Part shown: positions 54,701-56,116 of the stretch, piece by piece | Layout of the letters: each line of letters begins with the position of its first letter | Position numbering within the stretch: the stretch's first letter is position 1 | NCBI GenBank assembly: GCA_038087875.1 | Contig: JAXLNO010005631.1 | Span: 124,001-188,000, forward strand | Length of the DNA: 64,000 bases | Direction: 5' to 3' | DNA from: Malacoraja senta | Lineage: Eukaryota | Position numbers and translations under genes: made by a program | Notes under the pieces: generated by a model | Told to the model about the DNA's origin: nothing | What the model saw: only the letters and a program-made list of their open reading frames with translations | Database searches by the model: none

Positions 54701-54866
54701 ACTTTTTCGATAGATGTCATCCTTCGCCCTGCTCCTGGTTTCGGCCCGCACCGATCTGACGGACATGCTGTGTGTGTGTGTGTGTGTGTGTATTCGTTTG
54801 GCGGAGTCTGAGGGGAGAAGGGCCGGCACCTAGAGCGAGCGAAGACGCGGACAGACGGACGAAAGC
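54701..54866 (-). pseudogene. BCL7A: BCL7A-like exon 1 and 5'UTR, inverted copy with 17-nt deletion
   Basis: ATG at 54766: MSVRSVRAETRSRAKDDI, then aaacgggtcatggcagc is missing, then tatcgaaaaagt. Confidence 0.85.
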
Positions 54867-55156
54867 AACGATCATAGAGCGGCATAGGTGACATCTCGGG
54901 TCGAGACCCTTCTTCAGTCTGGCAGTCAAGTGAAAGGGAATCGGGAGATATAGGCATATGTTCCATTAATTTGTCCTTAGTACCATCTATATCTCTTGTT
55001 CCTCTTTACCCTGACTCAGTCTGAAGCAGATTTCGACCCGAGATGTCACTTTTTCCGCTCTATGATCGTTGCTTTCTTCCGTCTGTCCTCGCGTTCGCTC
55101 GCTCTTGGTGTCGGCGATTCTCCCCTCAGACTCCGCCAAACAAACACACACACAGC

Positions 55157-55248
55157 ATGTCCGGCAGATCGGTGCGGGCCGAGGCCAGGAGCAAGGCGAA
55201 GGATGACATCAAACGGGTCATGGCAGCTATCGAAAAAGTACGGAAATG
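55157..55248 (+). pseudogene. BCL7A: BCL7A-like coding exon 1 (92 nt) with intact donor
   Basis: [31 protein letters not shown] tg|gtaagg; 29/31 to the BCL7A N-terminus as recalled; no exon 2 found in the window. Confidence 0.88.
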
Positions 55249-56116
55249 GTAAGGCGGAAATAAAAAAAAACACCCTAAGGAAATAGATGTTTAACAAAAA
55301 AAAGGAGGTGGGCGGCGATCGCTCCGTGTCCGTTTCGGAGGGAAGGGGGGAGGATGGTTTGAGTTCCTCTTTCCCCTGACTCAGTATGAAGACGGGTTTC
55401 GACCCGAAATGTCACCTATTCCTTTTTTCCAGAAATGCCGTCCGACCCGCTGCGTTTTGTGTCTATCCTTTAATCTCTCATCCTGATATAGCAGAATCTC
55501 CCTGAATTAGCTTGACGCCATGACGGAAGCCGGTTACGGAAATGGCGCTGAAGATTACCCATCACCTACTACGGCTTTTTCACGAGTGAACCCTTTCTCC
55601 GGTCTATGATCTTTGGTGCTCACAATTCGAATACCTCCCTACACACCCGTTCCACGTCCCATTCCCACGACAGCACACGTTATTTCAACTCATTTCCTAC
55701 AAATATTCCGCCTCCAACAAGCAGAGCCACACAGTCTCTGGGCAAACTTTTCCCGGCTTCAGGCTGGTTCTACAACCAACCGCCATCAGGCTGTGACTTT
55801 TGGGCCACCAATCCTCATCTCGTTCCACACCATTTGTTCACTACAAATCTTTCACTATGTTCTTCACCTCTGCCTCATCACCCATGAACAGTCTCTATTT
55901 AAGGGCAAGCACCGCTCATTCGGTATCCCCACTGAACCCCGATCAGTTATTTCCTTTACGCTCCTCTTCCAAGCATTGTCATCCACCCTAAAGTAAGGTG
56001 GCTGCAATTGGATATGATGCCTGAGCAAAAACGGTTGCTTCTGTGTCTGTTGTTTGCAGAAAACTTCGGCGGTGTCTCCGTGGGTTTCACAGAAACCTCA
56101 GCAATTGGATACTTAC

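What the first reader, a model, noticed from the sequence alone, without database searches (positions are those of the whole stretch)
54701..55370. Captured BCL7A exon 1 present as a ~550-bp head-to-head palindrome inside another gene's intron
Seen: two inverted arms (about 54701-54952 and 54987-55240, loop about 33 nt), each carrying the 5'UTR and start of BCL7A-like exon 1. The right arm keeps the exon end, donor and following non-coding sequence, so capture was at the DNA level rather than by retrocopy. The arms carry complementary mutations (left MSV/ETRSR plus a 17-nt deletion; right MSG/EARSK), so both decayed from an intact ancestor after duplication. The block sits in the last SLC43A3-like intron, so host pre-mRNA would fold a long hairpin with sequence matching the BCL7A mRNA 5' end. 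Inference: a possible source of dsRNA or endo-siRNA against a SWI/SNF subunit transcript, or a marker of a gene-capturing mobile unit.
Basis: partly seen in the sequence, partly recalled or inferred. Interest (0 to 1): 0.75.

Follow-up and report, generated by a model that had tools for sequence, protein, structure and literature searches.

The report
Transposon-borne palindromic copy of BCL7A exon
Two mirror-image, decayed copies of the first exon of the chromatin-remodelling gene BCL7A sit in the last intron of a nucleobase-transporter gene because a jumping element picked that exon up and spread it to dozens of places in this genome; this is a known kind of event, and this copy shows no sign of a function.

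Summary
Arms 54701-54953 and 54987-55240 are 88% alike around a 33-nt spacer. The right arm holds an intact BCL7A-type exon 1 with its donor and 114 nt of intron. The left arm is frameshifted.

It is not a nested BCL7 gene and not an assembly artefact. Laid contigs show the exon-bearing segment in 37-59 distinct variants per run, at about 30-190 times single-copy depth, in this species and a relative. The family's majority letters restore the canonical BCL7A residues.

The mirror symmetry is larger than reported. It spans 53509-55615 and is flanked by an 8-bp direct repeat (7 of 8 bases match). The whole structure lies in the last intron of an SLC43A3/ENBT1-like gene on the minus strand.

Each half reads: Penelope-like terminal-repeat fragment with a degenerate hammerhead core, then the BCL7 piece, then a Penelope tail. 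This matches the documented Penelope insertion architecture: direct terminal repeats around an intron-containing host fragment, an adjacent inverted 5'-truncated copy, and a short target duplication.

A hAT-like TIR transposon is the main rival carrier.

The dsRNA/siRNA idea could not be tested. Only the hairpin potential is shown.

The scan had already noted BCL7 exon-1 copies elsewhere in this genome (s1-140720, s1-200032).

Verdict: a new member of a known kind, of modest interest.

The parts
53501..53508 (.). Left copy of the 8-bp target-site duplication (GTGCTGAC)
   Evidence: Direct repeat of 55616-55623, 7 of 8 bases. It sits exactly where the outer inverted homology ends.
53509..53605 (-). 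Outer left arm. It ends in the 18-nt X motif (53508-53525).
   Evidence: Local alignment with 55534-55615 scores 30.5 against shuffles of 10.5 +/- 1.2. There are 67 matches, 12 mismatches and 22 gap columns. The X motif occurs only 4 times in the window.
53606..54624 (.). Filler found only in the left half: a T-rich tract, a 42-bp palindrome (53909-53950), and a high-copy repeat (about 53966-54505, continuing to an AATAAA and (TCAA)n end at about 54622)
   Evidence: It has no counterpart in the right half. 53966-54505 is 69% alike to 61165-61659. Depth is 10^5-10^6 in X1.
54625..54701 (-). 3' part of a Penelope-like tail, 5'-truncated inside the hammerhead core; mirror of 55399-55457
   Evidence: (pair I3, 81%)
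54701..54766 (-). Left-arm remnant of BCL7 exon 1 (MSVRSVRAETRSRAKDDI, then a frameshift from a 17-nt deletion). The exon end and donor are missing.
54767..54864 (-). Left-arm BCL7 5'UTR piece with an expanded (CA)n repeat
54865..54882 (-). Inner left X motif
54883..54953 (-). Penelope-like terminal-repeat fragment with a degenerate minimal hammerhead core (CTGAAGA...GAGATGTCAC)
   Evidence: Depth is 1.5 million in X1.
54954..54986 (.). 33-nt spacer at the head-to-head junction
   Evidence: Position 54960 is covered by 67 other contigs, so at least its left part belongs to the repeated unit.
54987..55054 (+). Penelope-like terminal-repeat fragment with a degenerate hammerhead core (mirror of 54883-54953)
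   Evidence: 87% alike to the tail copy at 55363-55422
55055..55072 (+). Inner right X motif
55073..55156 (+). Captured BCL7 5'UTR piece
   Evidence: CpG observed/expected is 1.1 over 55057-55250 (5'UTR, inner X motif and exon) against 0.67 for the window.
55157..55248 (+). Captured BCL7A-type exon 1 coding part (31 codons, the last one split), with private changes T10A and R13K
55249..55362 (+). Splice donor GTAAGG and 114 nt of captured intron 1
   Evidence: 37-47 contig variants cover it.
55363..55457 (+). Penelope-like tail with a degenerate hammerhead core and the canonical 3' end
55458..55533 (+). Spacer Y, present only in the right half and itself repeated elsewhere
55534..55615 (+). 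Outer right arm, ending in the X motif (55599-55616). The last ~30 nt are at single-copy depth.
55616..55623 (.). Right copy of the 8-bp target-site duplication (GTGCTCAC)
56117..56240 (-). Host gene: penultimate exon of the SLC43A3/ENBT1-like gene
   Evidence: Matches ENBT1 residues 417-457 of 491, E 3.9e-10.
56603..56795 (-). Host gene: preceding exon
   Evidence: Matches ENBT1 residues 358-415, E 2e-11.
53255..53380 (-). Host gene: candidate last exon (a hydrophobic stretch, then a basic tail and a stop)
   Evidence: Found by motif, acceptor AG and phase 0. It has no significant PDB sequence match, so this is an inference.

Best explanation
The palindrome is one old, decayed insertion of a multi-copy mobile unit. 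Its cargo is a 291-bp piece of a BCL7A-type gene: about 85 nt of 5'UTR, the 31-codon first exon, its splice donor and 114 nt of intron 1.

The inserted structure spans 53509-55615. It consists of two mirror-image halves joined head to head. It is flanked by an 8-bp target duplication and lies in the last intron of an SLC43A3/ENBT1-like gene.

Each half is built as follows: a 5'-truncated Penelope-like terminal repeat with a degenerate hammerhead core, then the X motif, then the BCL7 piece, then a Penelope-like tail, then a spacer, then an end that repeats the X motif.

Most likely mechanism (inferred, not shown): a Penelope-like element next to the BCL7A promoter region gave read-through RNA. 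That RNA ran through exon 1 into a second Penelope tail in intron 1. The Penelope reverse transcriptase/GIY-YIG endonuclease copied this intron-containing RNA into new sites. Because the enzyme can prime on both cut strands, insertions often carry an inverted 5'-truncated copy next to the direct one, and that is the palindrome.

After insertion the left half lost 158 nt and 17 nt and gained about 1 kb of other repeats. Both exon copies picked up disabling or private changes.

This copy is a relic. It can form a long intronic hairpin in the host pre-mRNA, but nothing shows that this is used.
For: Multi-copy:
- Single-copy flank depth is about 300 (X1), 17 (X2) and 7 (X14).
- The BCL7 bins at 55004-55354 reach 9,668-59,537 (X1), 799-2,120 (X2) and 1,931-4,048 (X14).
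- Single positions are seen in 37-59 distinct contigs.
- Nearly all other copies carry A at 55184 and G at 55194. These restore RAETRSRAKDD, which is identical to BCL7A.

Not a gene:
- There is no exon 2 motif in the window.

Penelope context:
- The window holds 12 Penelope tails and several RT/GIY-YIG ORFs.
- Tails flank the BCL7 piece in the same orientation in both halves.
- Many contigs genome-wide join tails head to head (joints such as 54917->55401).
- An independent head-to-head tail pair with a one-sided extension lies at 4392-4545.

One insertion:
- Co-linear mirrored blocks have similar substitution divergence: 88% for the inner arms, 81% for the tails and 85% for the outer arms.
- The 8-bp direct repeat is GTGCTGAC/GTGCTCAC. 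The chance of 7 of 8 matches is about 4e-4 per offset.
- The X motif occurs only at the four symmetric positions (0.07 expected by chance).

Literature:
- Penelope insertions show 5' truncation, partial tandems (pLTR), an adjacent inverted 5'-truncated copy, an optional 30-40-bp extension and a bias for microsatellites (PMC8557442).
- In Adineta vaga, an intron-containing host gene lies between direct pLTRs, with an inverted pLTR and an 8-bp target duplication (PMC3846280).
- The anole enzyme cuts and extends both strands (PMC11167929).

Against an artefact:
- The arms differ by 12% and by large one-sided indels.
Against: - The outermost ends (X motif) are not recognisable canonical Penelope 3' ends. 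The canonical tail ends 158 nt inside the right end.
- The inner and outer X regions are only about 68% alike, and that alignment is not clearly above shuffles.
- The 8-bp duplication fits the hAT target pattern nTnnnnAn, and the ends start CAAAG, as hAT ends do.
- Earlier notes of this scan describe a TIR transposon with 8-bp duplications associated with a BCL7 exon copy elsewhere. I did not check those notes.
- No other family copy could be read base by base, so 5' truncation, true ends and the parent locus are unseen.
- Depth from summed contigs is only a rough copy-number proxy.
- All three hammerhead cores in the structure are mutated, and Rfam reports no hammerhead.
Confidence: 0.55

Rival explanations
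1. The carrier is a non-autonomous cut-and-paste DNA transposon (hAT-like, Pack-type capture). In this reading 53509-55615 is one element with long inverted repeats. Its termini are CAAAGATCATAGAG.../...CTCTATGATCTTTG and its target duplication is 8 bp. The BCL7 exon and the Penelope tails are cargo sitting in both long repeats.
For: - The terminal 13 nt are identical in inverted orientation, and the ends are about 85% alike over roughly 80 nt.
- The 8-bp duplication GTGCTGAC/GTGCTCAC fits nTnnnnAn, the Hermes/hAT target preference (PMC10368747).
- The ends start CAAAG, which fits the YARNG rule (my own knowledge).
- The scan's notes s1-200032, s1-172319 and s1-193211 report TIR transposons with 8-bp duplications and first-exon cargo in this genome. 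These are unchecked leads.
Against: - The terminal 27-34 nt are at single-copy depth, and unique unitigs start at 55552-55555, while the BCL7 core is in dozens of contigs. In a TIR family the termini should be the commonest part.
- A direct repeat of the end motif inside each half (55055-55072 and 55599-55616) has no natural place in a TIR element, but it is what pLTR-body-pLTR predicts.
- No transposase was seen.
- 8-bp duplications also occur with Penelope insertions (PMC3846280).
Confidence: 0.25
2. A single copy of the BCL7-bearing unit inserted, and the mirror half arose later in place. The cause would be a DNA-level fold-back (hairpin-primed) inverted duplication, unrelated to the transposition mechanism.
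For: - A short asymmetric spacer of 33 nt with short inverted homology at its edges (pair I6) is typical of fold-back duplications (my own knowledge).
- The arms are 12% diverged, so the event is old in either case.
Against: - The 8-bp direct repeat flanks the whole mirror structure. An in-place inverted duplication would not recreate a direct target duplication at the far end.
- Head-to-head Penelope tails are common genome-wide and occur elsewhere in this window.
- Another two-copy BCL7 structure of about 825 nt is noted roughly 83 kb beyond the window's end (s1-140720, unchecked).
Confidence: 0.08
3. The hairpin is a functional source of dsRNA, endo-siRNA or piRNA against BCL7A mRNA. It would be made from the SLC43A3-like pre-mRNA, or jointly from the many family copies.
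For: - A long imperfect hairpin is predicted: about 250 bp, -387.5 kcal/mol, z = -34.
- The arms include about 177 nt matching a BCL7A-type 5'UTR and exon 1.
- Dozens of copies exist.
Against: - No RNA or small-RNA data for this organism could be laid.
- The arms decay like neutral DNA: 12% divergence, a frameshift and one-sided deletions.
- The identity of the arms to the true BCL7A mRNA is unknown.
- Such hairpins are a routine by-product of Penelope insertions.
Confidence: 0.05
4. The right arm is the true first exon of a nested or neighbouring BCL7 gene, or the palindrome is an assembly artefact.
For: - The right-arm exon is open, has a good donor and is CpG-rich.
- No listed contig bridges the centre.
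Against: - The segment is multi-copy, with private substitutions at residues invariant in BCL7A/B.
- There is no exon 2 in the 8.7 kb downstream.
- The exon lies inside an insertion bounded at 55615 by a target duplication.
- The arms are 12% diverged with asymmetric indels, unlike the near-perfect palindromes of read artefacts.
- The window's own letter at 54960 has a depth of about 218 in X1, close to single copy.
Confidence: 0.03

Closest known systems
Penelope-mediated mobilisation of intron-containing host genes in the rotifer Adineta vaga (Arkhipova et al. 2013, PMC3846280)
   Same: Host sequence that keeps its intron is framed by direct Penelope terminal repeats. An inverted terminal repeat joins head to head. 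There is a short target duplication (8 bp for the NRPS gene copy) and an optional ~31-bp extension at one end.
   Different: Here the cargo is only a first exon with a short stretch of intron, not a whole gene. The host is a vertebrate and the copy number is dozens or more. The outer ends are not recognisable canonical Penelope ends. Penelope as the mobiliser is inferred from one copy.
HelibatN3 Helitrons carrying the NUBPL promoter, first coding bases and splice donor in vesper bats (PMC4778049)
   Same: A promoter-proximal 5' gene piece with an intact splice donor was captured once and amplified as transposon cargo. It is a potential exon trap when inserted in sense inside introns.
   Different: Helitrons have no inverted repeats and no target duplication, and they insert between A and T. 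This structure has both. Here the intact donor points antisense to the host gene, and the sense-oriented copy has lost its donor.
Pack-type gene-fragment capture by TIR DNA transposons (Pack-MULE, Tgm-Express/CACTA; PMC1947982), and hAT elements with 8-bp nTnnnnAn duplications (PMC10368747)
   Same: Inverted termini, an 8-bp duplication and a host gene fragment between the ends.
   Different: The termini are low-copy while the cargo is high-copy. The end motif is repeated directly inside each half. No transposase partner is known.
Hairpin-RNA (hpRNA) endo-siRNA loci and inverted-repeat pseudogene siRNA sources (my own knowledge)
   Same: An inverted duplication of a gene fragment that can fold into long dsRNA matching an mRNA.
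   Different: No transcription or small-RNA evidence exists here. The arms decay neutrally.

Membership tests
Penelope-like element insertion (pLTR-body-pLTR plus inverted 5'-truncated copy) | Hammerhead-bearing terminal-repeat fragments flank the body in the same orientation | tested here: met
   54987-55054 and 55363-55457 lie on the plus strand around the BCL7 piece. The mirror pair is 54883-54953 and 54625-54701. All match the window's other tails, including the one just downstream of the RT/GIY-YIG ORF at 51382-52740.
Penelope-like element insertion (pLTR-body-pLTR plus inverted 5'-truncated copy) | An adjacent inverted, 5'-truncated copy joined head to head | tested here: met
   The halves meet at 54954-54986 with different truncation points. 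The same form occurs at 4392-4545 and in many contigs.
Penelope-like element insertion (pLTR-body-pLTR plus inverted 5'-truncated copy) | A short target-site duplication around the whole unit | tested here: met
   GTGCTGAC at 53501-53508 and GTGCTCAC at 55616-55623, 7 of 8 bases. Sizes of 8-10 bp are reported in PMC3846280.
Penelope-like element insertion (pLTR-body-pLTR plus inverted 5'-truncated copy) | The unit's 3' terminus is a Penelope 3' end (the reverse-transcription start) | tested here: inconclusive
   The canonical tail ends at 55457, 158 nt inside the right boundary. The outer end shares only the X motif with the sequence after the inner hammerhead, with a weak alignment. The low-copy last ~30 nt recall the optional extension, but this is not shown.
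Penelope-like element insertion (pLTR-body-pLTR plus inverted 5'-truncated copy) | An active minimal hammerhead core (CUGANGA ... GAAA ... cleavage triplet) | tested here: not met
   All three cores in the structure carry changes in conserved positions: GAGA in place of GAAA in both arms, and AUGAAGA at 55387. Rfam finds no hammerhead. Activity is not needed for insertion in vitro (PMC11167929).
Penelope-like element insertion (pLTR-body-pLTR plus inverted 5'-truncated copy) | Family copies show variable 5' truncation with a fixed 3' end | not testable with these tools
   This needs the other genomic copies. Only contig counts are available: in X1 they run 28, 47, 59 rising from 55077 to 55111, then 38 at 55334 and 8 at 55481. 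That is suggestive only.
hAT-type non-autonomous DNA transposon with captured gene fragment | Terminal inverted repeats and an 8-bp duplication fitting nTnnnnAn | tested here: met
   The pattern is from PMC10368747.
hAT-type non-autonomous DNA transposon with captured gene fragment | Termini shared by all family copies (the most abundant part) | tested here: not met
   The bin 55589-55705, which includes the last 27 nt, has a depth of 312 against a single-copy level of about 300. Unique unitigs start at 55552-55555.
hAT-type non-autonomous DNA transposon with captured gene fragment | An autonomous partner encoding a transposase with matching termini | not testable with these tools
   None is in the window, and the genome is not searchable here.
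Functional BCL7 gene (first exon) | BCL_N exon 1 followed by exon 2 (EKKWVTVGDTSLRI...) on the same strand; single copy; conserved residues kept | tested here: not met
   Exon 1 is present. There is no exon 2 in the window. The segment occurs in dozens of contig variants. The right arm has T10A and R13K, and the left arm has G3V plus a frameshift.
Helitron gene capture | No inverted repeats, no target duplication, insertion between A and T, a 3' hairpin with CTRR | tested here: not met
   The structure has inverted ends and an 8-bp duplication.
Hairpin-RNA / endo-siRNA locus | A long foldback transcript | tested here: inconclusive
   The fold is predicted, but transcription was not observed. 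The runs that hold the locus behave as DNA.
Hairpin-RNA / endo-siRNA locus | Small RNAs of about 21-30 nt mapping to the arms | not testable with these tools
   No small-RNA run of this organism was offered.

The most novel reading that the evidence does not exclude
In a cartilaginous-fish lineage, a Penelope-like retroelement transduced the promoter-proximal first exon of the BAF-complex gene BCL7A and amplified it to dozens or hundreds of copies. Many of these copies would be laid down as head-to-head hairpins inside introns. The resulting dsRNA or small RNAs would act in trans on BCL7A, or the intact donors would create chimeric transcripts. This would make a transposon family a regulator of a chromatin-remodeller subunit.
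Probability: 0.05. Interest if true: 0.7.

Novelty: new member of a known kind. Interest (0 to 1): 0.33.

Why it matters
It shows that an apparently intact BCL7 'first exon' in this genome is transposon cargo. Gene annotators should mask it, because it can seed false BCL7-like or chimeric gene models.

If the Penelope route is confirmed genome-wide, it would be a vertebrate example of Penelope elements spreading intron-containing host sequence. So far this is documented mainly in rotifers. It would also caution against using intron presence to rule out RNA-mediated duplication.

For this locus itself, the practical consequence is a long hairpin in the last intron of the SLC43A3-like pre-mRNA. 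Its effect is unknown.

Tried and rejected
- **Rfam:** the gathering scan of the window found nothing. The permissive scan of 54300-55800 gave only sub-threshold matches. The best of these, mir-762 at 25.8 bits against a cut-off of 80, falls on the antisense of the left-arm exon. I read it as coding-sequence conservation: from memory, human MIR762 overlaps BCL7C exon 1.
- **Fetching other family copies:**
  - A protein search with the 50-aa in-frame stretch found only true BCL7A/B proteins and mammalian 5'UTR ORFs.
  - A search with the 96-aa out-of-frame ORF found nothing.
  - The HMMER scan of representatives returned only ordinary BCL7 proteins and upstream-ORF read-throughs from other vertebrates.
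  - A metagenome scan for a 20-mer of the 5'UTR found nothing.
  - The scan's own index gave nothing by sequence.
- **Protein Atlas:** uninformative for a host exon.
- **tRNA-derived SINE:** no tRNA-like sequence in 53300-55800.
- **Spacer Y (55458-55533):** not homologous to the left-half filler, to the repeat at 61 kb, or to the sequence downstream of other Penelope tails.
- **Sequence after the hammerhead in the arms:** not a diverged canonical tail.
- **Chance nesting:** I considered the Penelope/BCL7 dimer landing by chance inside an unrelated TIR element. I rejected this because the X motif is shared by the inner units and the outer ends and occurs nowhere else in 64 kb.
- **Empty site in the related species:** I could not test this because my single read laying stretch began at 53600.
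Full report
**1. Observation**

The repeat finder reports these pairs:
- 54783-54904/55033-55154: 122 nt, 89%
- 54708-54786/55137-55215: 79 nt, 90%
- 54701-54720/55220-55239
- 54924-54953/54987-55016

A gapped alignment of the two arms gives 208 matches and 28 mismatches (88%). It has indels of 2, 1, 14 (CA repeat) and 17 nt. The spacer is 54954-54986.

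The right arm encodes [31 protein letters not shown] from 55157, followed by GTAAGG.
- It matches Pfam BCL_N at E 2e-13.
- It matches 29 of 31 residues of solved BCL7A chains.
- Arg19 separates BCL7A from BCL7B, which has Lys there, so 'BCL7A-type' holds, but on that single residue.

The left arm reads MSVRSVRAETRSRAKDDI and then shifts frame. The minus-strand RNA folds into one long imperfect hairpin (-387.5 kcal/mol, z = -34).

**2. Host gene**

The host gene is on the minus strand.
- Exon 56603-56795 matches the solved human equilibrative nucleobase transporter 1 (ENBT1, SLC43A3) at residues 358-415, E 2e-11.
- Exon 56117-56240 matches residues 417-457 of 491, E 3.9e-10.
- LAT4 (SLC43A2) is a much weaker second match in both searches.
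- Both exons have good splice sites.
- A candidate last exon with the right phase, a hydrophobic stretch and a basic tail starts at 53380. It has no significant database match.

**3. It is not a gene and not an artefact**

No exon 2 motif occurs on either strand of the window.

I laid Logan contigs of two runs of the window's organism (X1, X2), one related species (X14) and a further species (X22) on 53600-57100.

| Region | X1 depth | X2 depth | X14 depth |
|---|---|---|---|
| Unique intron and exons, 55589-57100 | ~300 | ~17 | ~7 |
| 55004-55120 | 31,833 | 1,948 | 3,546 |
| 55121-55237 | 59,537 | 2,120 | 4,048 |
| 55238-55354 | 9,668 | 799 | 1,931 |

Single positions in the 5'UTR, exon and intron piece are covered by 37-59 distinct contigs in X1, 22-27 in X2 and 43-58 in X14.

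Nearly all of those contigs carry A at 55184 and G at 55194. That turns the window's EARSK into the canonical ETRSR. So the window's copy is one mutated member of a family whose common form encodes the exact BCL7A exon.

Summed contig depth is only a rough copy-number proxy. 'Dozens to more than a hundred copies' is as far as I go.

An assembly artefact is unlikely for two reasons. The arms differ by 12% and by large one-sided indels. The window's own letter at 54960 has about single-copy depth in X1.

**4. Anatomy**

A motif with the conserved hammerhead blocks (CTGAAGA, a GGGTC/GACCC stem, GAAACGTCAC) recurs 12 times in the window.
- One copy sits just downstream of a reverse-transcriptase/GIY-YIG ORF at 51382-52740. 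It is therefore the terminal repeat ('tail') of a Penelope-like element.
- Its depth in X1 is 1.5-3.1 million.

In the structure these tails frame the BCL7 pieces. The right half reads:

| Coordinates | Content |
|---|---|
| 54987-55054 | Tail 5' part with hammerhead core |
| 55055-55072 | 18-nt motif X |
| 55073-55156 | 5'UTR |
| 55157-55248 | Exon 1 |
| 55249-55362 | Donor and intron |
| 55363-55457 | Full tail |
| 55458-55533 | Spacer Y |
| 55534-55615 | Outer segment ending in a second X (55599-55616) |

The left half mirrors this with co-linear blocks:
- 54883-54953: tail 5' part
- 54865-54882: X
- 54701-54864: 5'UTR and exon remnant
- 54625-54701: tail 3' part, 81% complementary to 55399-55452
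- 53509-53605: outer segment

The outer pair aligns at score 30.5 against shuffles of 10.5 +/- 1.2. It has 67 matches, 12 mismatches (85%) and 22 gap columns. Its substitution divergence is therefore similar to that of the inner arms.

The left half lacks the equivalent of 55241-55398 and of Y. In their place it carries about 1 kb of other repeats (53606-54624).

X occurs only at these four symmetric places in 64 kb, with 0.07 expected by chance.

Immediately outside the outer ends lie GTGCTGAC (53501-53508) and GTGCTCAC (55616-55623), a direct repeat matching at 7 of 8 bases. The chance is about 4e-4 per offset, or about 2e-3 allowing five offsets. I read the whole of 53509-55615 as one insertion with an 8-bp target duplication.

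**5. Which mobile element**

*Penelope-like carrier (favoured)*

The published Penelope insertion architecture fits the layout closely.
- It shows frequent 5' truncation, partial tandems that put a terminal repeat on both sides of the body, and often an inverted 5'-truncated copy directly adjacent. An optional 30-40-bp extension sits at one end, and insertions favour microsatellites (PMC8557442).
- In Adineta vaga, an intron-containing host gene lies between two direct terminal repeats, with one inverted repeat and an 8-bp target duplication (PMC3846280).
- The purified anole enzyme cuts and extends both DNA strands (PMC11167929). This gives a route to head-to-head copies.

In this genome head-to-head tails are common.
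- Many contigs join a reverse tail to a forward tail, for example 54917->55401 in 12 contigs of X1 and 10 of X14.
- An independent pair with a one-sided extension sits at 4392-4545.

The direct repeat of X on either side of the BCL7-tail-Y body is what terminal repeat-body-terminal repeat predicts.

*hAT-like TIR carrier (main rival)*

The rival is a hAT-like TIR transposon.
- The ends start CAAAG.
- Thirteen terminal bases are identical in inverted orientation.
- The duplication fits nTnnnnAn (PMC10368747).
- Earlier notes of this scan mention TIR elements with 8-bp duplications and first-exon cargo. I did not check those notes.

Against it:
- The last 27-34 nt of the right end are at single-copy depth, and unique unitigs begin at 55552-55555, while the cargo is high-copy.
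- An internal direct copy of the end motif is not expected in a TIR element.

Against Penelope:
- The outer ends are not recognisable canonical tail ends.
- The inner and outer X regions are only weakly alike.

*Weights*

I put Penelope at about 0.55, a TIR element at about 0.25 and an in-place fold-back duplication at about 0.08. The fold-back is disfavoured because the direct duplication flanks the whole structure.

**6. Function**

Nothing indicates function. Both exon copies carry changes at residues invariant in BCL7A/B. All three hammerhead cores are mutated, and Rfam sees none.

The intact donor points antisense to the host gene, and the sense-oriented copy has lost its donor. So an exon-trap effect like that of HelibatN3/NUBPL (PMC4778049) is not expected at this locus.

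The hairpin could be edited or diced, but no RNA data of this organism could be laid.

**7. Comparison and novelty**

Capture and amplification of 5' gene pieces by mobile elements is well known. Examples are Helitron/NUBPL, Pack-type TIR elements, and Penelope with host genes in rotifers.

The scan had already flagged BCL7 exon-1 copies elsewhere in this genome (s1-140720, s1-200032) and palindromic mini-Penelope insertions (s1-200023).

This report adds three things: the full extent and boundaries of this copy, read-based evidence that the unit is multi-copy in at least two species, and an argument for the carrier.

It is a new member of a known kind, and the interest is modest.

Noticed in passing
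window 55678-57000 (flank of the insertion): X1 and X2 hold, besides the exact sequence, a second version about 87% alike. Its depth is about a quarter of the exact version's (for example X1 record 4 and X2 record 22). The related species' 3.4-kb contig starts matching at the same base, 55678. This may be a paralogous SLC43A3-like locus shared by both species.
   Followed up: partly
window 54726-54842 (+): A sub-threshold Rfam match to mir-762 (25.8 bits, E 0.6) lies antisense to the left-arm BCL7 exon. It probably reflects coding conservation only, because from memory human MIR762 overlaps BCL7C exon 1.
   Followed up: no
window 4392-4545: An independent head-to-head pair of Penelope-like tails. 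The inverted copy carries a ~25-30-nt extension beyond the usual 3' end and the direct copy does not, as described for Penelope 'tail' extensions.
   Followed up: partly
window 53909-53950: A 42-bp near-perfect palindrome (GGTTTAAACCGAAGAC...). It resembles two copies of the Penelope tail extension joined back to back, at the edge of a high-copy repeat.
   Followed up: no
window 53966-54505 and 61165-61659: Two copies (69% alike, opposite strands) of a very abundant repeat. Its ORF-like frames read ...ERRFL.G......SPRW.... The left copy runs on to an AATAAA and a (TCAA)n tail at about 54622. The family was not identified.
   Followed up: no
window 39567-40801 (+), 41612-41938 (-), 51382-52740 (-), 57316-58647 (-): Several 5'-truncated Penelope-like copies with RT and GIY-YIG reading frames. 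The 452-aa ORF at 51382-52740 is uninterrupted.
   Followed up: partly
window 44281-46749 (+) and 59102-60340 (-): An LTR-retrotransposon-like RT/integrase stretch and a separate LINE-like RT ORF of 412 aa (Pfam RVT_1, E 1e-35).
   Followed up: no
window 55057-55250 and 54701-54880: The captured 5'UTR and exon keep a CpG observed/expected ratio of about 1.1, against 0.67 for the window, despite 12% divergence between the arms.
   Followed up: no
window 50137-50206: A tandem repeat (ATTACAGTTACA), 5.8 copies, 96% matches.
   Followed up: no
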